A DNA stretch of 64,000 nt, taken from IMG/VR virus record IMGVR_UViG_3300001460_000004, positions 124,001 through 188,000 of that record; one strand, 5' to 3'. This document shows positions 2,671-64,000 of this stretch, one piece after another. The translations under genes were made by a program, and so were the position numbers. Position 1 is the stretch's first letter. The number at the start of each line of letters is the position of its first letter. The notes below the pieces were generated by a model. The model saw only the letters and a list, made by a program, of their open reading frames with translations. It searched no databases and had not been told where the DNA came from.

Positions 2671-4122
2671 ATGCAAATTGAATGTTTAGACAATCCTAAC
2701 AAGGACACAGTAGATGTTCTGTTGATTACAGTTCCGTGGACTGATAGTAGCATGCCATTGATGGCACCAGCAGTATTACTTCCTGTTATTGAAAGTACTG
2801 GTGCTACTGCTAAATGTGTTGACTTAAATATTGAAGTGTATAACATGGTAAAAGACCATGAACATAAAGATGCACTTGTTCGTTTTTTCTTTGACGAAGT
2901 AATTGATCCTGATATTGAAGAATGGGTGTTAGACATGCTTACTAGCATTGCTACACAAATCATGTCATATCAACCCAAGTATGTAGGATTAAGTTTGTTT
3001 AGTTATGTGTGTCAACACACTGCAAAATGGCTTAGTTATGTTATTAAAAAAATAGATCCTAATGTTAAAATTGTAATTGGTGGAGCAGGGTGTTTAACAA
3101 CTTTTACCGGCCCAAGTGAGTTTGCACAAGACTGCATACAACAAGGAATAGTTGATTACCATCTAAGAGGTGACGGCGAACAAGCATTTTATGAACTATT
3201 AACTGGTAATGCAGATTATCCTGGAATTAATAGTTTAGAATGGAAAGAACTTGATAGAGAAGCTCTTGCTAAACTTCCTATACCAGATTATAGACACTAT
3301 AATTTTGATCTCTATCAACAAAGAAGTTTGCCATTAGTTGGTAGTAGGGGATGTGTAAGACAGTGTAAATTTTGTGATTACATTGCTAATTGGAAGAAGT
3401 TTCAATGGCGTAATGCCGATGACATTTTTAACGAAATGTATTATCAATATAAAAAATACAAAATTAGAGATTTTAAATTTCAAGATAGTTTAACCAATGG
3501 AAACATGAAAGAGTTTTTGAGACTTACTGAGCTGTTAGCAGAACACAATCAAACAAATCCAGATGAAAAGTTTACCTGGAGTGGATATTTTATTTTTAGA
3601 AATCCAACAACAAACAGTGATTACGAATGGGAAATGATTAAAGCAAGTGGTGCTAAAGTATTAGTTGTTGGTATTGAAAATTTAAACGAACATATACGTT
3701 ATCATATAGGTAAAAAATTCAGTAATGAAGCCATTGATTATCATTTAGAGCAAGCCTATAAACATAATATTACAATACAAGTATTAAACATAGTTGGATA
3801 TATTAATGAAACTCAAGCCGATATTGACTTTGCAAAGAAATGGTTAGATGAACACACAAAATACAAAGACATGATGTATTTGCAATGGGGAGGAACACTG
3901 GGTATATTTCCTAATACCTGGCTTGAGCGTAATATTAATGATTTAGGTATAATACAAACAGACAAACATCCACAAAGTTGGGTTAATGAAAGTATTGGAA
4001 GCACACCTAGTGTAAGAGCAAACTGGGTCAAGGATCTCAATCAGTATAGTAGTAATTTAGGCTATACCGTAGCAGACAACATTGACAATCACTTTTTATT
4101 GGAAATTTTAATGAATGCTTAA
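2671..4122 (+). CDS. Cobalamin-binding radical SAM protein (class B methyltransferase-like)
   Basis: B12-binding-like segment (VGLSLF...IVIGGAG...RGDGE) followed by SRGCVRQCKFC (CxxxCxxC) and a VGIE motif. Confidence 0.85.
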   Translation: MQIECLDNPNKDTVDVLLITVPWTDSSMPLMAPAVLLPVIESTGATAKCVDLNIEVYNMVKDHEHKDALVRFFFDEVIDPDIEEWVLDMLTSIATQIMSYQPKYVGLSLFSYVCQHTAKWLSYVIKKIDPNVKIVIGGAGCLTTFTGPSEFAQDCIQQGIVDYHLRGDGEQAFYELLTGNADYPGINSLEWKELDREALAKLPIPDYRHYNFDLYQQRSLPLVGSRGCVRQCKFCDYIANWKKFQWRNADDIFNEMYYQYKKYKIRDFKFQDSLTNGNMKEFLRLTELLAEHNQTNPDEKFTWSGYFIFRNPTTNSDYEWEMIKASGAKVLVVGIENLNEHIRYHIGKKFSNEAIDYHLEQAYKHNITIQVLNIVGYINETQADIDFAKKWLDEHTKYKDMMYLQWGGTLGIFPNTWLERNINDLGIIQTDKHPQSWVNESIGSTPSVRANWVKDLNQYSSNLGYTVADNIDNHFLLEILMNA

Positions 4123-4549
4123 CTTACAAACAGCACTAATTGAACTTGAATTTGAATTTGGTCGAGCTAATGATCGTTTTATAAACATAGTTATTAGTGA
4201 TGCTAAAAGTAAATTTAATGTTTTTCCTTATGAGGATAACGGATGGTTTGGCCATGTTGCTTTGCCAGTGCAGTTACCAACTAAGATTTTTATAGAGTGT
4301 AGTGGCAAAACTGATCAAGATGTAATAGTAGACAAAAATAATAATATAATACAAGACACATATGTAAAAATTAAAAACATAAAAATAGATGGATTTTTCT
4401 TATCTAAAAATTATATTGACCAAAAAATTATACAGCATACGTCAACTGGTGAAGAAATTATCAGTAGTTATATTGGACACAACTGCTCAATTGTTTTAGA
4501 CTTTTCAAAAAATAATGCAATTTATCAAGTTTTATACGCTAATCAGTAG
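4115..4549 (+). CDS. Hypothetical protein coupled to the B12 radical SAM gene
   Basis: 144-aa ORF overlapping the upstream stop. Confidence 0.65.
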   Translation: MLNLQTALIELEFEFGRANDRFINIVISDAKSKFNVFPYEDNGWFGHVALPVQLPTKIFIECSGKTDQDVIVDKNNNIIQDTYVKIKNIKIDGFFLSKNYIDQKIIQHTSTGEEIISSYIGHNCSIVLDFSKNNAIYQVLYANQ

Positions 4550-4578
4550 TTGACTTTATAGTGCATTAGTGCTATAAT
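4550..4578 (+). promoter_or_regulatory. sigma70-type promoter for exonuclease/dNMP kinase
   Basis: TTGACT-N17-TATAAT. Confidence 0.75.
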
Positions 4579-4608
4579 ATAAATTACTATAGAGTTTAGG
4601 AGAAAAAC

Positions 4609-5136
4609 GTGGATATTATGATTGATTTAGAGACAGCAGGAGTAGGCCCTGATGCTTGCATATTAACAATTGCTGCTCAAGTGTTTGATCCACTTAAAGT
4701 AACAAACTTTTCTGACCTACCATATGGTTACTGGCGTGTAGATATAGACAGCCAACCTGACCGACAAGTTGACCAATCCACGATTGAATGGTGGGCAACA
4801 CAGCCTAAGCATATACAAGACGAAGCATTTAGTGAAGGCGATCGTGTTAGTTTGTCGCAGGCATTAACTGAATTAGGAAAAATGATCTGGCATAGTACTC
4901 GCTTTTGGGCACAAGGTCCAACGTTTGATGCTACTATATTAGAACATGCATATAAAAGTAATGGGCAAAGTTTACCTTGGAAATTTTGGAGTGTTCGCGA
5001 CAGTCGAACTTTATTCAGTTTAGTTCCTAATTTGCCAAGTCATCCAGCCTCACACAATGCTTTAGAAGATTGTCGAAGGCAAGTTAACATGTTACATGAT
5101 GCTTTTAAAATTTTAAATATTAGAGAGATAAAATGA
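4609..5136 (+). CDS. DEDD 3'-5' exonuclease (DexA / Rv2179c-like)
   Basis: MIDLET (Exo I), GPTFD (Exo II), HNALED (Exo III). Confidence 0.85.
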   Translation: MDIMIDLETAGVGPDACILTIAAQVFDPLKVTNFSDLPYGYWRVDIDSQPDRQVDQSTIEWWATQPKHIQDEAFSEGDRVSLSQALTELGKMIWHSTRFWAQGPTFDATILEHAYKSNGQSLPWKFWSVRDSRTLFSLVPNLPSHPASHNALEDCRRQVNMLHDAFKILNIREIK

Positions 5137-11750: not shown

Positions 11751-12206
11751 ATGGCTAATAAATTCATACAAGGTGCCTACAAGCCTCTTAATCCTCAAAA
11801 GTATGTAGGAAAAGGAACCCCTAGATATCGTAGTGGCTGGGAATGGGCGTTCTTTCAATTTTGTGATACTAATGTTAGTGTTTTGGAATGGGCTAGTGAA
11901 GCTATTGCTATAAAATACAAACATCCTTTTACAGGAAAAATAACAAATTATATCCCAGATGTGTTTGTACGTTATCGCACTAAAAATAATAAAATTTGTA
12001 CAGAATTAGTTGAAATTAAACCCAAAAAACAAAGTGTACTTGAAGGTAAAATGAATGAAAAACAAAAAATAACTGTTGTTATTAATATGGCTAAGTGGGA
12101 AGCAGCAAGAGCCTGGTGTAAAAATGCAGGGATTGTTTTTAGAGTTATAACTGAAGAGCAGATGTTTCATAACGGAAATCCTAAAGCCAAGGCAAAAAGA
12201 CGTTAA
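11751..12206 (+). CDS. Head completion nuclease (T4 gp4-like, TnsA-type PD-(D/E)xK)
   Basis: PLNPQKYVG, YRSGWE, WASE, YIPD...VEIKP, KWEAARAWC...FRVITE. Confidence 0.9.
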   Translation: MANKFIQGAYKPLNPQKYVGKGTPRYRSGWEWAFFQFCDTNVSVLEWASEAIAIKYKHPFTGKITNYIPDVFVRYRTKNNKICTELVEIKPKKQSVLEGKMNEKQKITVVINMAKWEAARAWCKNAGIVFRVITEEQMFHNGNPKAKAKRR

Positions 12207-12766
12207 TGCGGTGTGCATTTGTACATATTCCTAAAACTGGTGGCGGAAGTGTAGTTGAATGGGCAAAACGAAATAATGTCTGGGACCAATTTATTTTTTA
12301 TGGACACAAAGATATTGATTATATTAAAAATTTAGACGATACCTTTGATGCTAGTTTTTGCATTGTAAGAAATACATACAGTCGTTTGGTAAGTGCCTAT
12401 GTGTTCAGTGAGGCAAAGTTTCGCAAAAATATAACCAAAGGTTATCAACTTGAATGGATGACTAATTTATTATTAGCATGGGAAAAAGGTATTGTACCTT
12501 GGCTTGAACTAATGCACGAAACACAACATGTAACATGTAGAGATCAACTTGATTTTAGTCAAGGAGTAGATTTTATTATACAGACATCAGATTTGTATAA
12601 ATCTACAAAGTTACACGAAATGTTTAATATAACTGATCCTATTAGAAAAGAACGCAGAGTACAAATGTTTAACCCTAGCCTGTATTATACTACAGACTTT
12701 ATTAATTGTGTCAATAGACTATATAAAGACGAGATAGCATACTTTAACTACCAACCGGATATATGA
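12206..12766 (+). CDS. Sulfotransferase family 2-like protein
   Basis: FVHIPKTGGGS (5'-PSB loop), VRNTYSRLVSAY (3'-PB). Confidence 0.8.
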   Translation: MRCAFVHIPKTGGGSVVEWAKRNNVWDQFIFYGHKDIDYIKNLDDTFDASFCIVRNTYSRLVSAYVFSEAKFRKNITKGYQLEWMTNLLLAWEKGIVPWLELMHETQHVTCRDQLDFSQGVDFIIQTSDLYKSTKLHEMFNITDPIRKERRVQMFNPSLYYTTDFINCVNRLYKDEIAYFNYQPDI

Positions 12767-37806: not shown

Positions 37807-37864
37807 AAAGTTATTTAGTGACGTTTAAATGCAGTAAATATGTTTTTAGAAGGCAAAAATTTAT

Positions 37865-41668: not shown

Positions 41669-41673
41669 GAACA

Positions 41674-46041: not shown

Positions 46042-46493
46042 GTGAAAAACTAAACATAGCAAATGAAATGCGATGTGTGGATCAAAAAGATCGAGCCTTC
46101 TATGACAGTTTGACTGACGAAGAAAGAAAAAAGTTTTCAAACTTTCTTATGATACGGTGGAGTAGTTGTGTTAGCGGTGGTCGAGAAATGCAAGAGTACT
46201 ATGTACAAAGTTGCAATCATTTTTTAAACAAACATTTTTTTACTATTAACAAACATCCTAAACTACAATGGTTATGTGCTACAGCTATTAGTCCAGGAAT
46301 GGGAACGCATCGACACAATTGGATAAGCCCTAAAAAGAAAAATAAAGGAACTGATGCAAAGGTTCGCAAAATACTTTTACAAGAATTTCCTAATACAAAG
46401 TCTGATGACTTAGATGTACTATTAAAAATAAACAATTTAAAAGATGTACGAGCGTTTTTAAAAGAACGAGGGCATGATTCTAAAAGTCAGTAA
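46038..46493 (+). CDS. Possible clamp-loader small subunit (gp62-like)
   Basis: FLMIRWSS...N...HPKLQW...RHNWI pattern and size resemble gp62; weak. Confidence 0.45.
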   Translation: MSEKLNIANEMRCVDQKDRAFYDSLTDEERKKFSNFLMIRWSSCVSGGREMQEYYVQSCNHFLNKHFFTINKHPKLQWLCATAISPGMGTHRHNWISPKKKNKGTDAKVRKILLQEFPNTKSDDLDVLLKINNLKDVRAFLKERGHDSKSQ

Positions 46494-47220: not shown

Positions 47221-47238
47221 GTTAGTACTTATTAAGAA

Positions 47239-50903: not shown

Positions 50904-51607
50904 TGAAAAAAATTGTAAGTTTTGGAGATAGCTATGTTTGGGGCGATGAATTAATTGATCCTAAATTAGCAACACAACCTGATGCACATCCAGTGTTGAT
51001 TGAAAATACCAAATACAGAGAACAAAACTGTTATACGGGTTTGTTGGCCAACAGCTATGGTATTCCATACGAAAACTTTGGAATACCAGGTGGAAGTTTA
51101 CAAAGCACAGTTTGGACATATCTTTGGTGGCTTGATAATGAAAAACTACCCATTGAAGATTGTTTAGTTCTAGTTGGACTTACTGAACCTGGTAGGCACA
51201 GTTTTTATAATCCAAAGCATCGTGTGTATCCAAATGATACAGATTGGAATCGTTTTGTACACAGTAGCTGGATACATAGTAACAATAGCAGTGACAATGA
51301 ACAGTGGCATGAACTTGTTAAGTTACACACAGTATTGACAGATTGTCAAGCGTTAAGAGATCTAACACTACATACCACTCAATTGTTTTTTGAAAACACA
51401 CAACATTCACATCCTGTGGTACAATTTTTTACATTGAATCACACAGCTACTAAACCATACTCCACATTGTGGAATTCTACACAAAGCCTACGTGACTTAA
51501 CCCTGTCACCAAAATTACAAAAACCAAATGGTCATCCCAACGAAATTGGACATAAAATTATAAAAGAAGTCTTGCAAGAATACATATACCGTGCTATACT
51601 AAGTTAA
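50903..51607 (+). CDS. SGNH/GDSL-like protein
   Basis: FGDSYVWG, NFGIPGGS, GHPNEIGH. Confidence 0.7.
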   Translation: MKKIVSFGDSYVWGDELIDPKLATQPDAHPVLIENTKYREQNCYTGLLANSYGIPYENFGIPGGSLQSTVWTYLWWLDNEKLPIEDCLVLVGLTEPGRHSFYNPKHRVYPNDTDWNRFVHSSWIHSNNSSDNEQWHELVKLHTVLTDCQALRDLTLHTTQLFFENTQHSHPVVQFFTLNHTATKPYSTLWNSTQSLRDLTLSPKLQKPNGHPNEIGHKIIKEVLQEYIYRAILS

Positions 51608-52588: not shown

Positions 52589-53977
52589 ATGCTTAAAGAA
52601 TACAATCTCGATGTACAGAAATTGTTTTTAGAAATGATGTTAGAAGATGCACAAAGTTATGTGCGTATTCAAAACATATTCAATCCAGAAAACTTTGATC
52701 GAAGCTTGATCGAAGTAGCTAAGTTCATTAAAGATCATTGTGATGATTACAAAACAATGCCAGAGATAGCTCAGATAAACTCCAGCACTGGCGTGACACT
52801 AAGTCCAGTACCTGATCTCAACAGTGGACACTTTGAATGGTTTATGACCGAGTTTGAAAACTTTACTAAAAGACAAGAACTTGAACGAGCAATACTAAAA
52901 GCTGCAGACTTATTAGAAAAAGGTACGTATGAGCCAGTTGAAAAACTTATCAAAGATGCAGTACAAATAAGTTTGACACGTGATTTAGGAATAAATTATT
53001 TTGATGATCCACGTGCCAGGCTAACTGCTTTAAAAAACAACAATGGTCAAAACAGCACAGGCTGGAAAGCACTTGATAAAATGTTGTATGGTGGGTTTAA
53101 CAGAGGCGAACTACAAATATTTGCAGGCGGATCGGGCTCGGGCAAGAGTTTGGTTATGCAAAATTTAGCAGTTAACTGGATACAAGCAGGACTCAATGGT
53201 GTGTACATTACACTAGAATTAAGTGAAGGCTTAACTGCAATGCGTGTTGATAGCATGTTAACGGGCACCAGTAGCAAAGACATTTTTCGAGAGTTAGATA
53301 ATGTTGAAATGAAAATTAAAATGGCTGGCAAAGCAAGTGGGCAACTACAAGTCAAGTACATGCCAGCACAAAGCAATGTAAATGACATTAGGGCGTATTT
53401 AAAAGAATTAGAAATACAAAGTGGTTACAAAACAGACTTTTTGTTAGTTGACTATCTAGACTTATTGATGCCGGTTAGTGCAAAAGTTAGCCCAAATGAT
53501 CAATTTATTAAAGACAAGTATGTAAGCGAAGAACTACGCAATTTAGCAAAAGAGTTAAATGTATTGTTTGTAACAGCATCGCAATTAAATCGTAGTGCAG
53601 TTGAAGAAATTGAATTCGACCACAGTCATATTGCTGGTGGTATTAGTAAAATTAATACAGCAGATAATGTGTTTGGTATATTTACTAGCAGGGCAATGCG
53701 TGAACGTGGGCGATATCAGATACAAGCAATGAAAACACGTAGTAGTAGTGGAGTTGGACAAAAAATTGATTTAGATTTTGATATAGCTAGTTTAAGAATT
53801 ATGGATTGCGATGAAGATGCACAGCAAAGCAGTAGCGGGCATGGTAACATATACGAAAGCATTAAAGCAACAACAAATGTTAACGACACAAGTAGTCCAG
53901 TTACCGAAACTCGAAAAGTTGAAGCAGATGTGCAAAGTAGTAAACTTAAAGGCTTGCTAGCATCAATGAAATCATGA
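52589..53977 (+). CDS. Replicative DnaB-like helicase (gp41-like)
   Basis: GGSGSGKS, TLEL, VDYLDL, TASQLNR, TADNV, KTR. Confidence 0.92.
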   Translation: MLKEYNLDVQKLFLEMMLEDAQSYVRIQNIFNPENFDRSLIEVAKFIKDHCDDYKTMPEIAQINSSTGVTLSPVPDLNSGHFEWFMTEFENFTKRQELERAILKAADLLEKGTYEPVEKLIKDAVQISLTRDLGINYFDDPRARLTALKNNNGQNSTGWKALDKMLYGGFNRGELQIFAGGSGSGKSLVMQNLAVNWIQAGLNGVYITLELSEGLTAMRVDSMLTGTSSKDIFRELDNVEMKIKMAGKASGQLQVKYMPAQSNVNDIRAYLKELEIQSGYKTDFLLVDYLDLLMPVSAKVSPNDQFIKDKYVSEELRNLAKELNVLFVTASQLNRSAVEEIEFDHSHIAGGISKINTADNVFGIFTSRAMRERGRYQIQAMKTRSSSGVGQKIDLDFDIASLRIMDCDEDAQQSSSGHGNIYESIKATTNVNDTSSPVTETRKVEADVQSSKLKGLLASMKS

Positions 53978-54831
53978 TATTACCTAAGTTAGTTATTCCC
54001 AGTAGAATTAATCAACATTGGATAGAGAGTGGAATGGACTCGTACGATCTCTGTGTTGACAAAAAACATTTTAAAAAATACCCACACACTGTAAAATATT
54101 ATTACAACAGCCGTGGTTTTCGTGACCGTGAATGGCCTAACTCAGTAGATGATTGCATATGGTGTGTTGGTGATAGTTTTACAGTAGGGTTAGGGGTACC
54201 ACATGAACACAGCTGGAGTTATATACTAGGGGAACGTTTGAATAAACGCACAATAAATGTTAGCATGGATGGTGCTAGCAACACATGGATACGCAGGCAA
54301 GCTGTACAAATACTAGAACTACAACCCAAGTTACTAATACTACAATGGAGTTACATCACTAGACGAGAAGCAACTATGGATCAATTGTGGCAAAAGTTCT
54401 ACGATAGTGTGAGAGATCCAAGTTGGCCAGAATGTAAAACCTATGCACAAATTTCAGAGTTACCCGAGTGGATAAGAACTGAACTTGAAACAGTGCATAA
54501 CTGTAGCAATGTTATGGAAAACATCGACGATACTAATAAGCGTCTACGTTATACTCATACCAGCGACGAACAAGACAAAGAACATTTATACGATCAAATT
54601 ACACAAGTTGAAAGTGCAGTAGATTCAACTTTATTAATACATAGTTTTGTGCCTCATTTTAGTCCAAATGGATATGCTGTTCCCATTCCTAAAAGTATAC
54701 AACCAAGACATATACCTGAAATAACTAAATTAGATCTTGCTCGGGACGGTCATCACTATGATCGGTTAACTGCTGAACATTTTGTTGATCAGTTGGAGAA
54801 TTTAATAACTGAGAACAGTGCCATTTCCTAA
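53974..54831 (+). CDS. SGNH-like protein with an inserted DPxWP module
   Basis: YNSRGFRD, VGDSFTVG, NVSMDGASN, RDGHH; FYDSVRDPSWPEC insertion. Confidence 0.7.
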   Translation: MILPKLVIPSRINQHWIESGMDSYDLCVDKKHFKKYPHTVKYYYNSRGFRDREWPNSVDDCIWCVGDSFTVGLGVPHEHSWSYILGERLNKRTINVSMDGASNTWIRRQAVQILELQPKLLILQWSYITRREATMDQLWQKFYDSVRDPSWPECKTYAQISELPEWIRTELETVHNCSNVMENIDDTNKRLRYTHTSDEQDKEHLYDQITQVESAVDSTLLIHSFVPHFSPNGYAVPIPKSIQPRHIPEITKLDLARDGHHYDRLTAEHFVDQLENLITENSAIS

Positions 54832-55936
54832 GTTCTTCGGATTCTTTTACAGCACTATCATCGCTGTTGTATGGCTTACCTATCCCGTTTTCTGCAACCC
54901 ATTCGTTATACCAACCAGCAACTTCATCAAAGTTTTTAATCATTAATTTTTTTTCAGCCATAGTTTGTAATTTTATAGGCATTCCGGTTACTAATGCACC
55001 ACGATCGGTTAGCTCTTTGATTGCTAGAAAACTTTTGGTGTATGCTTTGCTATTGTTTAACAAGTACTGTTGATCAGTATTGCTTAAACTTTGAATAATA
55101 CCATTACGAGTGCTAGTATCATCTGGCACACTTAATTGAAAGTTTGGTTTGTTACTTTTATCTTCTAACAGCAATGTTGGTTCTACTTGTTTACTAAGTC
55201 CACTTATATCTCCCAGCAAGTAATGACATCGATTCCAGTCTTCAAATTCAATGCCAAATATATCATTCCAGTTACGTTTTTCTTGATGATTAAAGCAAGG
55301 TAATTCTAAACAAAATTCTTCAGCTCGAGGCATGTCTTGCTCGTAAACAAAGTAACTACCAACAGTAAAATATTGATCTACCCACTCTAAGTATTTTGCA
55401 TAGTCTTGAAGATATTTTATTAAACTCATGCGAGGAACTTTAATTTTTATACTGTAAAGGTCTTCGTAGTAATCTGCTTTATCTAATGGGTTGTAAACAT
55501 TAAGTTTGTCACTGCGGGTTACAATAACCCAACTTAGTGCATGTTCAAACAAATTTTCTCTTTGGGCACTAATAATATAAAAATGTTCATTTAGATATTT
55601 GTAAAATTCAACTTGTTGTGCAATTGGGTCATTGCGATTGCGAATATGATATTGTGCTAATCTGCTAGTTTTATAATGATCTACACTGCTTAGTAAATCT
55701 GTTATTTCGCTAAGTGTTTGATGATATCCTCTAGGTTGGTCAATTCTTTCTGGCTTTCCAAGAATTTCACTATTGTATTCTGGGCTAAAGTATCGTATAA
55801 TACCATTAGTAAGTTCGTGTAAGTTTATTACTGGACGATCGTATTTGTGTGCATTCATTAAAATAGTCAGTAATCTTTGCAAAAAAGTACTGCCAACTCG
55901 ATCTGGAGTTAATATTAATACATTGTTATGGTTCAT
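54725..55936 (-). CDS. Sulfotransferase-like (Stf0-like) protein
   Basis: LTPDRVGSTFL, LHE, RENLFEHALS, YE. Confidence 0.55.
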   Translation of the reverse strand: MNHNNVLILTPDRVGSTFLQRLLTILMNAHKYDRPVINLHELTNGIIRYFSPEYNSEILGKPERIDQPRGYHQTLSEITDLLSSVDHYKTSRLAQYHIRNRNDPIAQQVEFYKYLNEHFYIISAQRENLFEHALSWVIVTRSDKLNVYNPLDKADYYEDLYSIKIKVPRMSLIKYLQDYAKYLEWVDQYFTVGSYFVYEQDMPRAEEFCLELPCFNHQEKRNWNDIFGIEFEDWNRCHYLLGDISGLSKQVEPTLLLEDKSNKPNFQLSVPDDTSTRNGIIQSLSNTDQQYLLNNSKAYTKSFLAIKELTDRGALVTGMPIKLQTMAEKKLMIKNFDEVAGWYNEWVAENGIGKPYNSDDSAVKESEELRKWHCSQLLNSPTDQQNVQQLTDHSDDRPEQDLI

Positions 55937-55986: not shown

Positions 55987-57249
55987 ATGAGCAAACTATT
56001 CCCTGGAAAAGAAATATTCCCTGTTAACTCGCCAACTGCTTGTATGTTAAAATGGAGTTGGAGTACAATAAACCTGCAGGATGCATACACTAGTAGTTGT
56101 CACCGGGTAGAAGGTGAATATTTTGATATTGAACAATTTGATAATTTTCATAACTTACCTGAGAAAATCCTTGCAAGAGAAAAAATGCAACAAGGTATTT
56201 GGCCAGGCAAAGGATGCGAGTATTGCGAACGTGTTGAATGTGCCGGCGGCATCAGTGACAGGACAATGACACTAGAAAGGCAACACACCCGAGATAAAAT
56301 ACCACCTGAGTTGCATGACAACCCCAATGCCACACATGTAACACCTACAATACTCGAAGTGTACTTTAATAATACGTGTAATATGAGTTGTGTGTATTGT
56401 GCACCAAGTGTAAGTAGTCAAATAAATGCAGAAGTTACAAAGAATGGTGGTTTCAGTGTAGGTAACATGCATGTTGAACCTTTTGTTACTAACAACACAA
56501 GGCAAAAACTATTAGTAGAAAAACTTTGGAAGTATCTAAGTACTAACAATCGATATCAACACATACGGCACTTTAATATATTGGGTGGTGAACCATTATT
56601 ACAACAAGAGTTTGATCAGTGCATACAATTTTGGAATGACCATCCCAATCCTAGTTTAACTATTAATTTAGTGAGCAATTTAAACTTTGATCCTAAATTT
56701 TTTAAAAACAGAATAAACCAACTGCGCCAGTTAGTTGATGAATATAAAATATTTCAAGTTGAAATTACTGCAAGTTTAGATTGTTTAGGACCAGAGCAAG
56801 AATATGTTCGCCGTGGACTAAAACTACAAGACTATTGGGTACCAAACTTTGAATTTTTATTACAACAAGATTGGATCAAACCCAGTGTACACAGTTGTAT
56901 AAGTAGTCTCACAATTAAAACATTTGATCAATTAGTCAACAAACTTAACAGTTGGAACCACCAATACAATACTACAATAGATCATTCGTTTGATGTAGTA
57001 GTGGGGAAAAGTTGGCAAGAAATTGCTATGCATCCTATGTTTTTTGGACCTGGCGTATTTGACGAAGATTTTGATCGAATAATTCAAGCTATGCCACAAG
57101 GACACAGTCGACAACACATGCAAGGAATTGCTGATAGTATTCAAGCCGCCCAACGTGATGAAGTTAAAATAAACCAGTTAAAACAGTATTTACGGATACT
57201 AGACACTAGAAGAAATACAGATTATACAGAATTATTTCCTTGGCTTTAG
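55987..57249 (+). CDS. Radical SAM protein with N-terminal twitch/SPASM-like Cys cluster
   Basis: CMLKW...SCH...GCEYC; CNMSCVYC; GGEP; SLD..QEYVR. Confidence 0.9.
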   Translation: MSKLFPGKEIFPVNSPTACMLKWSWSTINLQDAYTSSCHRVEGEYFDIEQFDNFHNLPEKILAREKMQQGIWPGKGCEYCERVECAGGISDRTMTLERQHTRDKIPPELHDNPNATHVTPTILEVYFNNTCNMSCVYCAPSVSSQINAEVTKNGGFSVGNMHVEPFVTNNTRQKLLVEKLWKYLSTNNRYQHIRHFNILGGEPLLQQEFDQCIQFWNDHPNPSLTINLVSNLNFDPKFFKNRINQLRQLVDEYKIFQVEITASLDCLGPEQEYVRRGLKLQDYWVPNFEFLLQQDWIKPSVHSCISSLTIKTFDQLVNKLNSWNHQYNTTIDHSFDVVVGKSWQEIAMHPMFFGPGVFDEDFDRIIQAMPQGHSRQHMQGIADSIQAAQRDEVKINQLKQYLRILDTRRNTDYTELFPWL

Positions 57250-57551: not shown

Positions 57552-59454
57552 TATTCTTTTAACTGAAGGCGGTAATGTTTTTAAAGACCCTGAGGGCAAT
57601 ATTAAAACTCAGCGTATACAGCTTGCCGACATTGCCCCCACCATTAAATGGTTAGAAAACTTAACTGGATTACCATTAAGTGTTAACATGTTGGGAAGTA
57701 CCGGGCAAAAACCTTCTAGTGGTGATTTAGATTTAGCAGTTGATATTAACAAAGTCAGCAAAGAAGAACTTGACAAGACTCTTACAGATTGGCTTGTAAA
57801 GTCTGGCGTTGCTCCAGAAGATGTACATAAAAAACCCAATGGCTGGGTTATAAAGACTGGCATTAACGTACACTTCCTCACACCTATAGCCGGTAATCCT
57901 AAAAATGGTTATGTTCAAACTGATTTTATGTTTTTGCGTAAACCTGACTGGAGTAAGTTTATACTAACACAGGATCCCAACAGCGAATACAAAGGCGCAA
58001 GTCGTAATGTATTGTTAAACAGTATGGCTAAGAGCATGGGGTTGAAACTAAATCAAAATGATGGAATTATGTCACGTGAAGATAATAGACTTATTAGTGA
58101 TGATCCAGATGTTGTTGCAGAACTGTTACTAGGTAAGCCATACACTGCTCAAGACTTGATGAGTGTTGAAAAAATAATGAAAGCTCTCCAGAGTAATGGT
58201 AATCGAGACGCACTTATTGCTGATTGGCTAGCACATATGGAACGTCAAGGTACTCCATATCAAGGTGAAGTAAACGAAGATAACGAAGTAAGTTTAATGG
58301 CTAGGTTGCGTGATAGAATTATCAATCAAGGCATGAGTGTTATTACCGAAAACCCATATAATTTATATGTATTAAAAGAAGGAGCACGTATTGCACATCC
58401 TGAGGATCTAATATTTGACTTAGGTGCTGCAGGAGCAAACGATGCAATGCGGCAATTACAAGCTACTAGCGATAGTCCTACTAGTGCTACAGTTAAATGG
58501 GACGGAAAACCTGCAATTATTTTTGGTAGAGACGAAACTGGGCAGTTTATACTCACTGATAAGAGTGCATTTGTGGCAACTAAATATGATGGTATAGCAA
58601 AATCACCCAAACAGTTAGCACAAATAATGAATATGAGAAAAGGTGACAGGACTGATTTAAATAAAATGTATGCTAGTATATGGCCAAAAGTAGAAGCTAG
58701 TTTACCTCAAAACTTTAGAGGATTTGTAATGGCTGACTTGCTATACAGTAATACACCTCCTTTAAAAAATGGAAATTATATTTTTAAACCCAATACTGTA
58801 ACTTACAGTGTAAATGCAAATAGCGAATTGGGCAAACGTATTGCTGACAGTAGTGTAGGATTAGCAGTACACACTTACAAAAAAGGACCAGGTGACAGCG
58901 GAAGTCCTATACAAAGTTTAGATATAAATCCAGGTACAGGTGTTACCATATTTGGTAGCAAAGATGAAGGTATACAAAGTGCAAAATTAAATAGTGCATT
59001 ATACAAACAAACAGCCGGCATGATAAAACAACATACTTCTGGTATCAACACACTGTTTGCACCAGAGAATTTGAGAAGTAATAAAATAAGCAACTTACCC
59101 GAGCTTATGAAACAGTATGTTAATCACAGAGTACGCAGTGGGGGATTTAAAAACTTGCTCACAGATTTTGCCCCTTGGGTGCGAGCTAAAGCACCGACTA
59201 AAAGCGAACGTATACTTAAATGGGCAAATGAAAACGAAGCTGCATTCGTAGCCGTATTTGAGATATTTTTAAAGATAACCCAACTCAAAAATGATTTAGT
59301 TGCACAGTTTGATAAACAAACAAAAGACGTACAAGCAAGCTATGATACTGGTGATCGTGGCCATGAAGGGTATGTAGCAAACGATTTAAAATTTGTAGAT
59401 CGTTTTAAATTTAGTAGAGCAAACTTTGCACAAAATAATCCTGACTTAACATGA
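57541..59454 (+). CDS. Fusion of a Pol-beta-type nucleotidyltransferase and an ATP-dependent ligase-like domain
   Basis: LGS...GDLDL...QTDF; then KWDG, EGYV, LKFV (ligase motifs I, IV, V). Confidence 0.65.
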   Translation: MSSNILLTEGGNVFKDPEGNIKTQRIQLADIAPTIKWLENLTGLPLSVNMLGSTGQKPSSGDLDLAVDINKVSKEELDKTLTDWLVKSGVAPEDVHKKPNGWVIKTGINVHFLTPIAGNPKNGYVQTDFMFLRKPDWSKFILTQDPNSEYKGASRNVLLNSMAKSMGLKLNQNDGIMSREDNRLISDDPDVVAELLLGKPYTAQDLMSVEKIMKALQSNGNRDALIADWLAHMERQGTPYQGEVNEDNEVSLMARLRDRIINQGMSVITENPYNLYVLKEGARIAHPEDLIFDLGAAGANDAMRQLQATSDSPTSATVKWDGKPAIIFGRDETGQFILTDKSAFVATKYDGIAKSPKQLAQIMNMRKGDRTDLNKMYASIWPKVEASLPQNFRGFVMADLLYSNTPPLKNGNYIFKPNTVTYSVNANSELGKRIADSSVGLAVHTYKKGPGDSGSPIQSLDINPGTGVTIFGSKDEGIQSAKLNSALYKQTAGMIKQHTSGINTLFAPENLRSNKISNLPELMKQYVNHRVRSGGFKNLLTDFAPWVRAKAPTKSERILKWANENEAAFVAVFEIFLKITQLKNDLVAQFDKQTKDVQASYDTGDRGHEGYVANDLKFVDRFKFSRANFAQNNPDLT

Positions 59455-60065
59455 TACAATTAGACCGTAGCAGTCTTATTTTAACAACATATCGTACTGG
59501 AAGTACAGCCCTGTGTTCGCAACTGCAAGATAGTGGATACCACAATCACGACGAAGCATTTACGTGGGGTAAAAATGCATTTGATTTTACAGAAGCTGTT
59601 AGGAATATTGATTACAAATTTGTTGTTAAAGTTATGCCTGATCAACTCAACGATAGCATTATTGCATATCTTAATAGGTTAATTAAAACAAATCATGTAC
59701 AAGTAATTAGACTATATCGACGAGATATTGTTGCACAAATTGCTAGCATTTATATTGCAAAAAAAACAAAAAATTGGCATGTTACTGATAGAGAAGATAC
59801 AACTCAACAACAGATTGCAATTGATGATCGATTCTTAGCAGAAACAGTACACAACATGTTATCAATGTCATATAACTTAACACAATTGCCTATAGGTATT
59901 GATACACAATTAGTTTATGAAGATTTAGATTTATCTAACAGTCAGTACAAAGTAAATCCAAAACCCAATAACTACAATACAATATTAGATAAAATTCAAA
60001 CAATTATACATAATAATACAGATTTAACCAATCAATACAGTACATTTTACAGTTGGTATGAATAA
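59451..60065 (+). CDS. Stf0-like sulfotransferase
   Basis: TYRTGSTALC, RRDIVAQIAS, VYEDL. Confidence 0.75.
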   Translation: MIQLDRSSLILTTYRTGSTALCSQLQDSGYHNHDEAFTWGKNAFDFTEAVRNIDYKFVVKVMPDQLNDSIIAYLNRLIKTNHVQVIRLYRRDIVAQIASIYIAKKTKNWHVTDREDTTQQQIAIDDRFLAETVHNMLSMSYNLTQLPIGIDTQLVYEDLDLSNSQYKVNPKPNNYNTILDKIQTIIHNNTDLTNQYSTFYSWYE

Positions 60066-62703: not shown

Positions 62704-63036
62704 GTGTTTGCTCGTGAGATACTTGAAACTACATCAACAGAAGTAGAACAGTTAGCAGCTATCACTCGATTCCTGATAGGTAGAGCTGACGATGAAATGG
62801 CTGAGAAAAAAATCTCAGTTGACGTATTGATTTCACTAGCAAATGATTTTGGACTTCCTATAAACAAAAGACAATTGCGTGACTTATCCCAAAAACCTCC
62901 AATGGATAGCTTTATTCAAAAAATCACCAATGATGAAATTTTCTTTACTGGAGCAACACAAGATATGGATGATAACATGGATATTGATAAAGCTAGAGAT
63001 ACTGTAAAGAAGATGGCCAAACGTGCAGCAAAGTAA
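62704..63036 (+). CDS. Hypothetical protein (MFAREILE N-terminus)
   Basis: 110-aa ORF, GGAGG SD. Confidence 0.65.
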   Translation: MFAREILETTSTEVEQLAAITRFLIGRADDEMAEKKISVDVLISLANDFGLPINKRQLRDLSQKPPMDSFIQKITNDEIFFTGATQDMDDNMDIDKARDTVKKMAKRAAK

Positions 63037-63047
63037 TATTTGCAAAA

Positions 63048-63665
63048 ATGTTTCAAAAATATCAGCTTACCCCAACTAACTTAGAACACGATTATCTTTG
63101 GTATAATAACAATTGCGGATGGGTAAGTGTTCCTAAAAATGCAAATATGATGATTCGTAATATTTGCGAACATTTCAACATGGATTATAAATTAAAATCT
63201 GTAGCAGAACGTCCTGTTGAAATGTTTTGTGTTGTACGCAATCCATGGCTGCGTTTTGTAAGTGGCATGGCGGAGTGCTTGTATCGACGGCACAACGGAA
63301 CTACTCGCACAAGTATGAATGAGTTGCTGTTAGCAATAGATCAATTTTACGAAGAGCCACATTTGTTTGATGAACATTTAGAACCGCAAATTGCATATGT
63401 ACACGGGTATACTTTTACTAAAATTGTAAAATTTGAAAACTTACTAAATGACTTATTAAAAGTTGAGTATTTAAACAAGGACAAATACTTAGTAGCAAGA
63501 TATACAAACCCTAGTTTAACACAAGTGAGTAAATACTTTAACAGTATACATCAAGTTGTCAAACAACATGAATTATTAATTAATAAAGTAATTGAAAAGT
63601 ATTATGCACGTGATTATGAAATATGGCTTTGCCCGCCAGAATACGAAAACAAACTTATAACTTAA
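63048..63665 (+). CDS. Sulfotransferase family 2-like protein
   Basis: VPKNAN, VRNPWLRFVSG, HLEPQ, KFENL, YARDYE. Confidence 0.75.
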   Translation: MFQKYQLTPTNLEHDYLWYNNNCGWVSVPKNANMMIRNICEHFNMDYKLKSVAERPVEMFCVVRNPWLRFVSGMAECLYRRHNGTTRTSMNELLLAIDQFYEEPHLFDEHLEPQIAYVHGYTFTKIVKFENLLNDLLKVEYLNKDKYLVARYTNPSLTQVSKYFNSIHQVVKQHELLINKVIEKYYARDYEIWLCPPEYENKLIT

Positions 63666-63675
63666 AGGAGCACAC

Positions 63676-64000
63676 ATGTTTAAATTTACTAAGCCAGCAT
63701 TATCGAGAATAGTTAATGCTATTGAAGGCACTGACTACAAAGGTATTTTTGTAGATATTAAAAAAAGTGGTTGCACTGGATATAGATATGTGTTACAATA
63801 TGTAGATACAGTTGATGCAGAATGGAGTAAAAGCACTTCGGATGGCATTGACATTTATTGTGATAAAACACAATATTTTATTAATACTACTATTGACTAT
63901 AAAAGTGATATCTTTAAGGAAGGTTTTGAATTTGTTAATCCTAATGAAAGTGCCCAATGTGGCTGTGGGGAGAGTGTAAACTTTGATATCCCATCGCTAC
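63676..64000 (+). CDS. A-type Fe-S carrier (IscA/SufA/HesB family), runs off the right edge
   Basis: Hand translation MFKFTKPA...KKSGCTGYRY...IDY...FEFVNPNESAQCGCGES; AAGGAG SD; absent from the ORF track. Confidence 0.9.
   Translation, partial: MFKFTKPALSRIVNAIEGTDYKGIFVDIKKSGCTGYRYVLQYVDTVDAEWSKSTSDGIDIYCDKTQYFINTTIDYKSDIFKEGFEFVNPNESAQCGCGESVNFDIPSL

What the first reader, a model, noticed from the sequence alone, without database searches (positions are those of the whole stretch)
2671..64000. Dispersed, largely late-promoter-driven enzyme toolkit: candidate virion surface-decoration system
Seen: about 30 accessory enzyme genes slotted singly or in small groups between core genes: 5 radical SAM, about 5 sulfotransferase-like (12206, 24120, 54725, 59451, 63048), 3 SGNH-like (42955, 50903, 53974), 3 paralogous PGxxG-motif proteins, SDR, 2OG oxygenase, 4 methyltransferases, several glycosyltransferases and an Fe-S carrier. 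Several have their own TAA(A/G)TA late promoter (37806, 37865, 41792, 47220, 55936, 55987) or lie inside structural operons. Inference: a diversifying pathway that builds and tailors (sulfates, methylates, acylates, oxidises) a glycan on the virion or infected-cell surface, rather than an early host-takeover function. No PAPS-synthesis genes are visible in this window.
Basis: partly seen in the sequence, partly recalled or inferred. Interest (0 to 1): 0.8.

Follow-up and report, generated by a model that had tools for sequence, protein, structure and literature searches.

The report
Marine jumbo phage glycan-tailoring gene islands
A marine jumbo phage carries about 30 sugar-building and tailoring enzyme genes in several independently inherited islands; the central one is a late-expressed glycan-assembly operon that is also found in a cultured SAR11 phage, but what the glycan is attached to remains unknown.

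Summary
The gene inventory is largely real. There are five radical SAM genes: four paralogs of the N-terminal-twitch family NF033640 and one B12 class. Five proteins carry both PAPS-binding motifs of sulfotransferases. There are also four methyltransferases, six glycosyltransferase domains, a nucleotidyltransferase-cupin fusion, a 2OG hydroxylase and an Fe-S carrier. The SGNH, SDR and PGxxG calls rest on short motifs only.

TAA(A/G)TA is a genuine upstream signal. It precedes structural genes but not replication genes. As TAA(A/G)TA-N5-ATG it marks eight probably leaderless genes, including terminase, a virion protein and four accessory units. About one third of the toolkit, however, sits in sigma70-type units headed by gp32, UvsX and a UvsW-adjacent promoter.

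This is not one pathway. The genes form separately inherited modules in variable slots of a conserved backbone. The clear glycan module (31473-38584) has three GT8-like and three beta-Kdo-transferase-like domains, two FkbM methyltransferases and an RfaE-like nucleotidyltransferase. It is widespread in the clade and homologous to an island in Pelagibacter phage Mosig that includes a sulfotransferase. All its enzymes are soluble.

Virion decoration is the best guess (about 0.4). Host-envelope remodelling is a close rival.

The parts
2671..4122 (+). Class B (B12-binding) radical SAM enzyme. It follows the gp13 neck gene and has TAAATA 34 nt upstream.
   Evidence: Pfam Radical_SAM E 1.5e-9 plus B12-binding. 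NCBIfam gives only partial matches to class B methyltransferases. Homologs sit in rSAM arrays of a relative (L092) and of Halobacteriovorax (L086).
12206..12766 (+). Sulfotransfer_2-like protein inside the tail operon, next to a TnsA-like endonuclease.
   Evidence: Pfam E 9e-4, below cut-off. PKTGG-S and RN...R..S motifs. Paralog of 63048. Homolog of the Mosig island sulfotransferase.
24120..27429 (+). Cassette A: a sulfotransferase-like gene (24120), an N-twitch rSAM (24751), a Rossmann/SDR-like gene (25715) and an N-twitch rSAM (26284). It follows gp32 directly, downstream of a sigma70-like promoter.
   Evidence: Inherited as a block in 16 of 80 UvsX-anchored loci and absent from many others. 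Promoter at 23005-23033, 11 of 12 matches.
27411..28286 (+). PGxxG-loop protein of unknown fold.
   Evidence: N-terminal strand plus PPGGFGS loop. No family hit.
30172..31490 (+). Two class I SAM methyltransferases (30172-30747 and 30744-31490) at the end of the UvsX unit.
   Evidence: Pfam Methyltransf_23/31/11, E 1e-10. 30744 is conserved in 32 of 80 loci.
31473..37806 (-). Seven-gene late operon (island B). In transcription order: nucleotidyltransferase-cupin 37048; FkbM methyltransferases 36389 and 35772; two-domain GT 34079 (GT8-like plus Kdo-transferase-like); Kdo-transferase-like 33178; GT-A with DxD motif 32336; Kdo-transferase-like 31473.
   Evidence: AlphaFold model of 33178 has pLDDT 92. 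Foldseek top hits are KpsC, WbbB and KrkA, E 1e-7 to 1e-5. The HP motif aligns to WbbB. TAAATA-N5-ATG sits at 37806. No transmembrane segments.
37807..37864 (.). 58-bp divergent late-promoter region: TAAATA-N5-ATG leftward and TAAATA at -32 rightward.
37865..38584 (+). GT8-like GT-A glycosyltransferase with a YLDLD motif. It is the most conserved GT of the island and resembles phage P1 PmgQ.
   Evidence: PHROG 1962, E 2e-22. Profile against PDB hits 6mw5, the Skp1 alpha-galactosyltransferase, E 0.0025. Present in 63 of 80 clamp-loader-anchored loci. P1 PmgQ 28% and Mosig 32% identity.
38575..39366 (+). PGxxG-loop protein of unknown fold.
39414..40223 (+). Late gene with its own TAAATA, an SD sequence and a strong terminator. 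It encodes a lectin/CBM-like beta-sandwich with a disordered Ser/Thr-rich C-terminal tail. It is a candidate acceptor or glycan-binding virion protein.
   Evidence: 22% Ser+Thr, against a proteome median of 11.7%. AlphaFold: residues 1-170 confident, 177-269 with pLDDT below 50. Weak Foldseek hits to Ca-dependent CBM and lectins, and to a viral SGNH-fusion protein. About half of relatives have a Ser/Thr-rich protein in the same slot. Terminator at 40235-40256.
41792..42937 (+). N-terminal-twitch radical SAM gene. It forms its own leaderless late unit after a terminator.
   Evidence: NF033640, 294 bits against a cut-off of 170. Terminator at 41742-41772. TAAATA-N5-ATG. At least 967 metagenomic homologs.
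42955..43737 (+). SGNH-like protein (GCS ... DLHP) heading the UvsW unit from a perfect sigma70-type promoter.
   Evidence: Motifs. TTGACA-17-TATAAT ends 7 nt before the ATG. No family hit.
46480..47220 (-). 2OG/Fe(II) Asp/Arg-beta-hydroxylase-like cupin in a leaderless late unit. The true start is 47220.
   Evidence: PF05118, E 1e-5. The called product is 246 aa. TAAGTA-N5-ATG.
47907..48899 (+). PGxxG-loop protein. It shares a motif of about 34 aa with 53974.
50903..51607 (+). SGNH-like protein (GDS ... GHP), downstream of 50124, which has a TAAATA.
   Evidence: Motifs only. No family hit.
53974..54831 (+). GDSL/SGNH-like protein overlapping the end of the DnaB-like helicase gene.
   Evidence: Pfam Lipase_GDSL_2, E 1.6e-4, below cut-off.
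54725..55936 (-). Stf0/Sulfotransfer_1/3-like protein in a leaderless late unit with a perfect TATAAATA-N5-ATG.
   Evidence: Atlas feature and structure neighbours are sulfotransferases. Pfam Sulfotransfer_1, E 0.036. Motifs. Promoter. Strain-specific: it was found only in copies of this genome.
55987..57249 (+). N-terminal-twitch radical SAM gene, divergent from 54725, with TAAGTA-N8-ATG.
   Evidence: NF033640, 191 bits..
59451..60065 (+). Stf0-like sulfotransferase after DUF6267.
   Evidence: PF09037, E 6e-7. NF047724, E 1e-4. Motifs.
63048..63665 (+). Sulfotransfer_2-like protein.
   Evidence: PHROG 3347, E 1e-4. Pfam E 0.024. Paralog of 12206.
63676..64000 (+). Fe-S A-type carrier, cut by the window end.
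   Evidence: PF01521 on the 110-aa product in the full contig.

Best explanation
The window comes from a marine jumbo myovirus of about 250 kb, related to PA5oct and Rak2. Its conserved backbone has variable slots that hold several independently inherited accessory modules, not one pathway.

The core module is island B (31473-38584). It is a cytoplasmic oligosaccharide-assembly set with these parts:
- an RfaE-domain-II-like nucleotidyltransferase fused to a PMI-type cupin, which would activate a sugar phosphate;
- three GT8-like GT-A domains and three GT-B domains closest to CMP-dependent beta-Kdo transferases, which would build the chain;
- two FkbM methyltransferases, which would O-methylate it.

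The scattered sulfotransferase-like proteins probably sulfate the same glycan, because a member of one of these families lies inside the homologous island of pelagiphage Mosig. The SGNH-like and 2OG enzymes are plausible further tailoring steps (inferred).

Island B and several singletons are transcribed from T4-type late promoters, often as leaderless mRNAs. The terminase and a virion protein gene use exactly the same signal. The most likely acceptor is therefore a phage-made late product, meaning virion proteins. Candidates are the Ser/Thr-rich lectin-like protein encoded beside the island, or the tube and sheath extensions.

Cassette A (sulfotransferase, rSAM, SDR-like, rSAM), expressed earlier with gp32, may supply a modified precursor.

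Shown here: the enzyme families, the modular inheritance, the promoter association and the solubility of the enzymes. Inferred: the donor sugars, the sulfation and the acceptor.
For: Families.

Modularity and diversification:
- Island B genes occur in 50-71 of 160 related loci.
- Kdo-transferase-like copy number ranges from 1 to 6 per locus.
- Cassette A is present in 16 of 80 loci.

Late signal:
- TAA(A/G)TA precedes 8 of 9 structural or packaging genes but only 1 of 10 replication genes (Fisher p = 0.001).
- TAA(A/G)TA-N5-ATG occurs 9 times against about 2 expected. Eight of these start ORFs of at least 80 aa, including TerL, 21625, the island B operon, rSAM 41792, sulfotransferase 54725 and the 2OG gene.

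Other points:
- There are no transmembrane segments in any GT, sulfotransferase, rSAM or methyltransferase. No flippase, polymerase or ligase is present.
- The nearest Atlas clusters are 100% viral, so these are long-standing phage families and not recent host copies.
- GT37865 is nearly core. It is followed in about half of relatives by a small Ser/Thr-rich protein, and it resembles P1 PmgQ, which database records annotate as having a putative morphogenetic function.
- The Mosig island holds eight homologous genes, including a sulfotransferase.
- In another T4-like lineage the nucleotidyltransferase-cupin lies just upstream of gp13-gp18.
- There is a precedent: phage-encoded GTs glycosylate mycobacteriophage capsid and tail tube (Freeman et al. 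2023, as cited in PMC12619734).
Against: - No acceptor has been identified and no virion glycan data exist.
- The GT families (GT8, Kdo-transferase-like, RfaE-like) are those of the LPS inner and outer core, whose enzymes are also soluble or peripheral.
- The island lies in the replication module (UvsX to clamp loader), not in a structural operon.
- About 10 accessory genes sit in sigma70-type units.
- 'Late' is inferred from motif association only. No gp55 homolog is present in the window.
- The catalytic Asp of retaining Kdo transferases is not conserved in the phage family.
- The N-twitch rSAM family occurs without any GT in Bdellovibrio-like genomes.
- No PAPS or ulosonic-acid synthesis genes were seen.
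Confidence: 0.4

Rival explanations
1. Host-envelope remodelling. The island extends or caps the infected cell's LPS core or capsule with a methylated, sulfated oligosaccharide. This would block superinfection or stop progeny from adsorbing to debris.
For: - Every identifiable family has its best-known members in LPS or capsule assembly. These are GT8 (Atlas neighbour clusters), KpsC and WbbB, RfaE domain II, and FkbM with an RfbT-like hit.
- PF05118 also contains the lipid A hydroxylase LpxO (established knowledge).
- Core GTs need no transmembrane segment and use the host's own export route.
- LPS-type gene clusters are already known in marine myoviruses (own knowledge).
Against: - Late, terminase-like promoter timing leaves little time to renew the surface.
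- The families are virus-only clusters and not host-like copies.
- No membrane, flippase or ligase component is present.
- The apparent transmembrane anchor on the 2OG enzyme was an artefact of an over-long ORF.
Confidence: 0.25
2. The toolkit is not one function. Island B makes a glycan. The radical SAM enzymes, with their Fe-S carrier and perhaps the sulfotransferase-like and PGxxG proteins, modify something else: a protein or peptide, through epimerisation, C-methylation or cross-links, or a metabolite or nucleotide.
For: - N-twitch rSAMs form tandem arrays of up to 8 paralogs with no GT nearby in Bacteriovoracaceae and Bdellovibrionales.
- One relative has six N-twitch rSAMs plus the B12 rSAM in a row (L092).
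- Secondary NCBIfam hits are to peptide maturases such as PapB, SkfB and the rSAM_ocin family.
- The modules are inherited independently.
- T4-like marine genomes with up to 12 rSAM genes plus Fe-S carriers have been reported (PMC5332604).
Against: - No precursor peptide was found. The 93-aa gene at 29442 is a conserved backbone gene, not an rSAM partner.
- Twitch enzymes such as BtrN and MoaA act on small molecules, including sugars (established knowledge).
- rSAM and sulfotransferase genes are repeatedly adjacent here (24120/24751 and 54725/55987).
Confidence: 0.2
3. DNA hypermodification. The GTs and tailoring enzymes decorate modified bases of the phage genome to evade restriction.
For: - Phage GTs often glycosylate DNA (review statements in PMC12619734).
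- A gp1-like dNMP kinase lies at 5133.
- Cassette A is co-transcribed with gp32.
Against: - No homolog of T4 gp42, alpha-GT or beta-GT is present in the window.
- No hydroxymethylase Pfam was seen in about 30 kb of flanks.
- The GT operon carries the late signal, not the replication-gene signal.
- Six GT domains plus methylation and sulfation exceed known DNA glycans.
Confidence: 0.08

Closest known systems
Glycan island of Pelagibacter phage Mosig EXVC030M (MT647606, about 124.8-130.7 kb)
   Same: Eight homologous genes lie in one cluster: two FkbM methyltransferases, a 32336-like GT-A, a GT8-like GT (45% identity to the N-half of 34079), two Kdo-transferase-like proteins, a 12206/63048-like sulfotransferase and a 37865-like GT. 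It is also a marine T4-like myovirus of low GC content.
   Different: Mosig is a 141-kb phage of the Kyanoviridae, not a jumbo phage. It has no nucleotidyltransferase-cupin in the cluster, and no N-twitch rSAM was detected in cultured phages other than three Vibrio phages. Its island is annotated but has not been studied functionally.
Virion glycosylation of mycobacteriophages (Che8, Corndog and Myrna type; Freeman et al. 2023)
   Same: Phage-encoded soluble GTs, with methyltransferases in some cases, would modify phage structural proteins in the cytoplasm late in infection.
   Different: In those phages the GT genes lie in the structural operon and the glycans sit on C-terminal extensions of capsid and tail tube. 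Here the island is in the replication module, the GT families differ, sulfotransferases and rSAM enzymes are present, and no glycosylated protein is known.
Retaining beta-Kdo transferases KpsC (GT107), WbbB (GT99) and KrkA
   Same: They are the best structural matches to the 33178/31473/34079-C family (Foldseek E 1e-7 to 1e-5). They share the R-x-H-P-G and N-S-S motifs.
   Different: TM-score is only about 0.5 and sequence identity 10-15%. The Asp nucleophile four residues after the conserved Gln is not conserved in the phage family. Donor and acceptor are unknown.
LPS/carbohydrate gene clusters and rSAM/Fe-S gene sets of marine T4-like phages (for example cyanophage P-SSM2; environmental genome TARA_ERS488813_N000010)
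   Same: These are variable islands of GTs, methyltransferases and cupin/2OG enzymes, with multiple rSAM genes and A-type Fe-S carriers (PMC5332604). The nucleotidyltransferase-cupin fusion is very common in marine viral contigs.
   Different: Those reports give gene lists without promoter architecture, fold assignment or acceptor. The present clade is a jumbo PA5oct/Rak2-like lineage.
NCBIfam NF033640, N-terminal twitch radical SAM proteins
   Same: Three of the four paralogs pass the curated cut-off. The CX3CX2C motif and four N-terminal Cys residues are invariant.
   Different: The family has no assigned function. The phage copies are dispersed singly, whereas in Bdellovibrio-like bacteria they form tandem arrays.

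Membership tests
NF033640 N-terminal-twitch radical SAM | Score above the curated cut-off (170 bits) | tested here: met
   41792 scores 294.5 bits, 26284 scores 255.6 and 55987 scores 191.2. 24751 scores 130.5, below the cut-off.
NF033640 N-terminal-twitch radical SAM | CX3CX2C SAM-cluster motif plus an N-terminal Cys set for an auxiliary cluster | tested here: met
   C125, C129 and C132, and C13, C31, C71 and C74, are invariant in the four paralogs.
PAPS-dependent sulfotransferases | 5'-PSB loop (P/x-K/R-x-G-S/T-S/T) and 3'-PB motif (R-x-x-x-x-R-x-x-S) | tested here: met
   Both motifs were seen by inspection in 12206, 24120, 54725, 59451 and 63048, and they are conserved in 14 orthologs of 24120.
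PAPS-dependent sulfotransferases | Significant match to a sulfotransferase family model | tested here: inconclusive
   59451 scores 29.6 bits on PF09037 (cut-off 22), but no single stretch passes. 12206, 63048 and 54725 are below cut-off. 24120 has no hit. Atlas neighbours of 54725 are sulfotransferases.
PAPS-dependent sulfotransferases | Sulfate transfer from PAPS | not testable with these tools
   No PAPS-synthesis genes were found in the window or the flanks examined. The host would have to supply PAPS.
Retaining beta-Kdo glycosyltransferases (GT99/GT107) | GT-B-like two-Rossmann fold closest to KpsC and WbbB | tested here: met
   The AlphaFold model has pLDDT 92. The first 27 Foldseek PDB hits are all KpsC, WbbB or KrkA, E 1.6e-7 to 2e-5, TM about 0.5.
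Retaining beta-Kdo glycosyltransferases (GT99/GT107) | HP motif of the CMP-binding site | tested here: met
   The profile aligns R-x-H-P-G-S and N-S-S with WbbB residues 256-321, E 0.015.
Retaining beta-Kdo glycosyltransferases (GT99/GT107) | Asp nucleophile in the Q-x-x-x-D motif | tested here: not met
   The Gln is conserved in at least 60% of 26 sequences, but no Asp is conserved four residues later. The expected position of the motif is recalled from the literature, not aligned structurally.
GT8-like GT-A glycosyltransferases | DxD motif and similarity to GT8 members | tested here: met
   32336 has an invariant W-x-D-x-D. 37865 has an invariant D-L-D, and its profile hits the GT8 Skp1 galactosyltransferase 6mw5 at E 0.0025. 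Atlas neighbour clusters carry PF01501.
T4-type late promoter | TATAAATA-like element upstream of late (structural) genes and not of replication genes | tested here: met
   The element precedes 8 of 9 structural genes against 1 of 10 replication genes, Fisher p = 0.001. The core here is TAA(A/G)TA; the full TATAAATA occurs only 4 times.
T4-type late promoter | gp55-type late sigma factor | tested here: not met
   No window ORF resembles T4 gp55; the best E-value is 0.49. The rest of the 250-kb genome was not examined.
Phage virion glycosylation system (mycobacteriophage type) | GT genes embedded in the virion structural operon | tested here: not met
   The island lies between UvsX and the clamp-loader-like ATPase. 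The link to structural genes is through the promoter type only.
Phage virion glycosylation system (mycobacteriophage type) | Glycans on virion proteins | not testable with these tools
   This needs purified virions.
T-even-type DNA glycosylation | dCMP/dUMP hydroxymethylase plus a DNA glucosyltransferase | tested here: not met
   No homolog of T4 gp42, alpha-GT or beta-GT is present in the window.
SGNH hydrolases | Block I G-D-S and block V D-x-x-H, plus a family-model match | tested here: inconclusive
   The motifs are present: GDS in 50903 and 53974, GCS in 42955. Only 53974 has a Pfam hit, 22.7 bits against a cut-off of 32.9.

The most novel reading that the evidence does not exclude
Abundant marine myoviruses, both this jumbo clade and SAR11 pelagiphages such as Mosig, build a methylated, sulfated oligosaccharide containing ulosonic acid or heptose in the cytoplasm late in infection. 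They attach it to virion proteins, giving ocean phages a variable anionic glycan coat. N-terminal-twitch radical SAM enzymes, otherwise found as arrays in predatory Bdellovibrio-like bacteria, tailor the glycan or its protein acceptor.
Probability: 0.2. Interest if true: 0.8.

Novelty: new variant of a known kind. Interest (0 to 1): 0.5.

Why it matters
If marine phage particles carry sulfated, methylated glycans, several things would change: how they adsorb to hosts, how they stick to marine gels and particles, and how they resist proteases and grazers. It would also mean that part of the so-called auxiliary metabolic gene load of ocean viruses is really virion chemistry.

The homologous island in the cultured phage Mosig makes the question testable at the bench. 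Two by-products stand on their own. One is the leaderless TAA(A/G)TA-N5-ATG late start signal. The other is the sharing of a function-unknown radical SAM family between phages and Bdellovibrio-like predators.

Tried and rejected
- Megablast of 24 kb against GenBank phages found no match.
- Single-sequence PDB searches of 34079 and 54725 found nothing.
- Profiles of 32336 and 24120 against the PDB gave no credible hit.
- The PGxxG trio has no family hit, and paralogy is not demonstrable.
- A lipid-A-hydroxylase-like membrane anchor on the 2OG enzyme was rejected. The hydrophobic N-terminus belongs to an over-long ORF. The real start is 47220.
- The 93-aa gene at 29442 was considered as an rSAM precursor or partner and rejected. 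It is a conserved backbone gene beside a variable slot.
- T4 gp55, gp42, alpha-GT and beta-GT were compared with all window ORFs, with no similarity.
- The annotated neighbourhood of the only cultured-phage rSAM homologs (Vibrio phage K566) consists of hypothetical proteins only.
- RNA evidence was uninformative. No RNA run was listed for the island. Metatranscriptome contigs laid on 36900-42899 gave only short conserved pieces from relatives and one 166-nt exact piece in 37048-37806.
- Walking the genome about 30 kb beyond both window ends found a UDP-glucose/GDP-mannose dehydrogenase, RNR, tail fibres and neck genes. It found no PAPS, Kdo or hydroxymethylase genes.
- A search for close relatives of 54725 returned only copies of this genome.
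- The 'moraphage' paper (PMC12619734) describes a different lineage.

Full report
**What the window is**

The 64-kb window has 34-37% GC and no tRNA genes. It encodes a T4-like backbone:
- neck protein gp13 (1596);
- a 1133-aa sheath (6163), a tail tube (9607) and a tube-like protein (10277);
- a cell-wall hydrolase (19503), large terminase (20051) and a virion protein (21625);
- gp32-like SSB (23142), UvsX (28337), a clamp-loader-like ATPase (40661) and a UvsW-like helicase (43734);
- primase (51607) and a DnaB-like helicase (52589).

The terminase is 52% identical to that of Pseudomonas jumbo phage PA5oct. More distant relatives include Phosso, Atu_ph07 and XaC1, and a conserved neighbour gene also matches Rak2-like phages.

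The same genome occurs as contigs of 230-251 kb in several marine and brine metagenomes. More than 600 IMG/VR contigs carry UvsX at 80-88% identity, so this is an abundant uncultured marine jumbo-phage clade.

**Checking the inventory**

*Radical SAM genes.* There are five. 2671 is a B12-binding class B enzyme. 24751, 26284, 41792 and 55987 are paralogs of one another. Three of them pass the curated cut-off of NCBIfam NF033640, the N-terminal-twitch radical SAM family. The CX3CX2C motif and four N-terminal cysteines are invariant.

*Sulfotransferase-like genes.* All five quoted genes carry both PAPS-binding-type motifs. Model support ranges from moderate to none:
- 59451: Stf0, E 6e-7;
- 12206 and 63048: sub-threshold matches;
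- 54725: Atlas neighbours only;
- 24120: no model hit, although the motifs are conserved in 14 orthologs.

*Other enzymes.* The four methyltransferases, the nucleotidyltransferase-cupin fusion, the 2OG hydroxylase and the Fe-S carrier (63676 to the window end) are solid. The SGNH-like genes, the SDR-like gene and the PGxxG proteins rest on short motifs. The PGxxG trio cannot be shown to be paralogous.

**The glycosyltransferases**

The minus-strand run 37806 to 31473, together with 37865 on the plus strand, holds six GT domains.
- 34079 has two domains. The N-half is GT8-like. The C-half is paralogous to 31473 and 33178.
- An AlphaFold model of 33178, built from 26 homologs, has pLDDT 92. Its closest PDB folds are the CMP-Kdo-dependent retaining transferases KpsC, WbbB and KrkA (E 1e-7 to 1e-5, TM about 0.5). 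These rank ahead of ordinary GT-B enzymes and of UDP-GlcNAc 2-epimerases, which share that fold.
- A sequence profile independently aligns the R-x-H-P-G and N-S-S motifs with WbbB.
- The Asp nucleophile expected four residues after the conserved Gln is not conserved. I therefore call these proteins Kdo-transferase-like, not members of that family.
- 32336 has an invariant W-x-D-x-D motif. 37865 has an invariant D-L-D motif and hits the GT8 Skp1 galactosyltransferase at E 0.0025. Both are GT-A enzymes.
- The first gene of the operon fuses an RfaE-domain-II-like nucleotidyltransferase to the cupin of type II phosphomannose isomerases. This fusion is very common in marine viral contigs, with more than 8000 relatives, the top 120 of them at 67-100% identity.
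- None of these proteins, and none of the sulfotransferases, rSAMs or methyltransferases, has a predicted membrane segment. No flippase, polymerase, ligase or polyprenyl-phosphate transferase is present.

**Promoters**

TAA(A/G)TA alone is frequent, at 109 copies on both strands. It is nevertheless strongly concentrated upstream of genes: it precedes 25 of 77 genes against about 3.5 expected.

The motif partitions by gene class. It precedes 8 of 9 identifiable structural or packaging genes but only 1 of 10 replication genes (Fisher p = 0.001). Near-consensus sigma70-type promoters sit in the intergenic regions before the exonuclease (4609), gp32, UvsX and 42955.

The exact arrangement TAA(A/G)TA-N5-ATG occurs nine times against about two expected. 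Eight of these start ORFs of at least 80 aa. Spacings of 2-4 and 6-11 give none or one. The eight genes are:
- TerL (20051);
- virion protein 21625;
- 60672;
- a previously unlisted gene at 5710-6054 on the minus strand;
- four accessory units: the island B operon (37806), rSAM 41792, the 2OG gene (47220) and sulfotransferase 54725 (55936).

In T4 the transcript starts a few bases after TATAAATA (own knowledge), so these mRNAs are probably leaderless.

By position, about 19 accessory genes lie in TAA(A/G)TA-headed units. About 10 lie in sigma70-type units. These are cassette 24120-28286 behind gp32, the two methyltransferases behind UvsX, 42955, 53974 and probably 47907. That the motif is 'late' is an inference from this association. 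No gp55 homolog is in the window.

**Comparison with relatives**

The backbone order is conserved: TerL, 21625, gp32, UvsX, 29723, clamp loader, UvsW and onward. The accessory genes occupy variable slots.
- Cassette A (sulfotransferase-like, rSAM, SDR-like, rSAM) is present as a block in 16 of 80 UvsX-anchored loci and absent from many others.
- Island B is present in most loci, but its composition changes. The two-domain GT is often split. Kdo-transferase-like copies number 1-6 per locus. FkbM and other methyltransferases come and go. Some genomes lack the island altogether.
- Island proteins are 30-50% identical between relatives, against 60-88% for backbone proteins.
- GT37865 is nearly core, present in 63 of 80 clamp-loader loci. 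It almost always ends the island.
- In about half of the loci GT37865 is followed by a small Ser/Thr-rich protein (17-25% Ser+Thr).
- In the window that slot holds 39414. It has its own TAAATA, an SD sequence and a strong terminator. It encodes a confident lectin/CBM-like beta-sandwich followed by a disordered Ser/Thr-rich tail.

The accessory set is therefore several independently inherited modules, not one dispersed pathway.

**Links outside the clade**

Pelagibacter phage Mosig is a cultured SAR11 myovirus. One cluster in its genome carries eight homologs: two FkbM methyltransferases, a 32336-like GT-A, a GT8-like GT, two Kdo-transferase-like proteins, a 12206/63048-like sulfotransferase and a 37865-like GT. 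This is the best evidence that the sulfotransferase-like proteins belong functionally with the glycan island.

Other links:
- GT37865 resembles P1 PmgQ, which database records annotate as having a putative morphogenetic function.
- The two-domain GT also occurs in Caulobacter jumbo phages.
- In another T4-like lineage the nucleotidyltransferase-cupin lies just upstream of gp13-gp18, beside rSAM, cupin and 2OG genes.

The N-twitch rSAM family behaves differently. In a scan of one genome per bacterial and archaeal species, full-length bacterial members are mainly in Bdellovibrionales, Bacteriovoracaceae and Halobacteriovorax. There they form tandem arrays of up to eight paralogs among housekeeping genes, with no GT nearby. 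One locus also has a homolog of the B12 rSAM. Several MAG contigs labelled Legionellales or Porticoccaceae are in fact phage contigs of this clade. One of them has six N-twitch rSAMs plus the B12 rSAM in a row.

**Interpretation**

Shown here:
- a late-signal, soluble, multi-GT operon with a sugar-activating enzyme and methyltransferases;
- the diversification of that operon;
- membership of its genes in virus-only protein clusters.

Inferred: the donor sugars (heptose/mannose type and a CMP-activated ulosonic acid), sulfation, and the acceptor.

I favour virion proteins as the acceptor, at about 0.4, for four reasons:
- the promoter signal is shared with the terminase and a virion protein gene;
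- there is no membrane or export machinery;
- a Ser/Thr-rich late protein repeatedly neighbours the island;
- there is a precedent in mycobacteriophages.

Remodelling of host LPS or capsule is a close rival (0.25), because every recognisable family is an LPS-core or capsule family and such enzymes are also soluble. An unrelated role for the rSAM set, in protein, peptide or metabolite modification, is plausible (0.2) and is compatible with either of the first two. DNA glycosylation is unlikely (0.08). No hydroxymethylase or T-even GT homolog was found, and the operon carries the structural-gene signal, not the replication-gene signal.

Early expression of cassette A does not contradict the main explanation if the cassette makes a precursor pool. 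That point is conjecture.

**Novelty**

Carbohydrate and 'LPS' islands, and multiple rSAM and Fe-S genes, are already known in marine T4-like phages (PMC5332604; own knowledge of cyanophage genomes). Virion glycosylation is established for mycobacteriophages.

New here:
- the fold-level assignment of the island (GT8-like plus Kdo-transferase-like plus an RfaE-like fusion);
- its homology to a cultured pelagiphage island that contains a sulfotransferase;
- its late, leaderless promoter architecture;
- the sharing of the rSAM family between phages and Bdellovibrio-like bacteria.

No paper in the searchable library describes this combination. I rate it a new variant of a known kind, of moderate interest. 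It would be of high interest if a sulfated glycan coat on marine virions were demonstrated.

Noticed in passing
window 20051, 21625, 41792, 60672 (+); 55936, 47220, 37806, 6054 (-): TAA(A/G)TA followed by exactly 5 nt and ATG occurs 9 times. Eight of these start ORFs of at least 80 aa. Spacings of 2-4 and 6-11 give none or one. This probably marks leaderless late mRNAs. 42955 likewise has a perfect TTGACA-17-TATAAT ending 7 nt before its ATG.
   Followed up: yes
window 5710-6054 (-): A 114-aa gene lies in the 403-bp 'gap' before the sheath gene, divergent from it, with TAAATA-N5-ATG. It shows weak zinc-ribbon and HNH-like hits. It is called as a gene in the public contig.
   Followed up: partly
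L093, L091, L097, L096, L090, L086 (Bacteriovoracaceae, Bdellovibrionales and Halobacteriovorax genomes): N-terminal-twitch radical SAM genes form tandem arrays of 2-8 paralogs among housekeeping genes in predatory Bdellovibrio-like bacteria. Halobacteriovorax also has a homolog of the phage B12 rSAM next to one. The function of these arrays is unknown.
   Followed up: partly
L085, L092, L101 (MAG 'Legionellales bacterium SP228'); L094 (Porticoccaceae MAG MED13): These MAG contigs carry TerL, gp32, UvsX or DnaB genes of this phage clade, so they are mis-binned phage contigs. L092 has six N-twitch rSAMs plus a B12 rSAM in a row, followed by a small P-loop kinase-like ORF and an HxGH nucleotidyltransferase-like ORF.
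   Followed up: partly
window 47907-48899 and 53974-54831: Two otherwise unrelated proteins share a stretch of about 34 aa (D-P-x-W-P-x-C ... L-P-x-x-I-K/R-x-E-L ... H-N) at 38% identity, E 2e-6.
   Followed up: no
window 11751-12206: A TnsA-like endonuclease gene sits inside the tail operon directly before sulfotransferase-like 12206. It may be a mobile-element remnant that delivered the neighbouring gene.
   Followed up: no
window 6163-9564: The tail sheath is 1133 aa, with inserted CBM5/12-like and flagellin-IN-like segments, and 20% Ser+Thr.
   Followed up: no
L212 20042-21289 (about 20 kb downstream of the window in the same genome): This flank holds a UDP-glucose/GDP-mannose dehydrogenase gene, another nucleotide-sugar enzyme outside the window. 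Nearby are an IMPDH-like gene, HSP20, ClpS and UvdE. RNR, glutaredoxin, a PAAR protein and a pectate-lyase-like protein follow the Fe-S carrier.
   Followed up: partly
window 46480-47301 (-): The longest ORF overstates the 2OG gene by 27 codons. Those extra codons create a spurious hydrophobic N-terminus and overlap gene 47239 on the other strand.
   Followed up: yes
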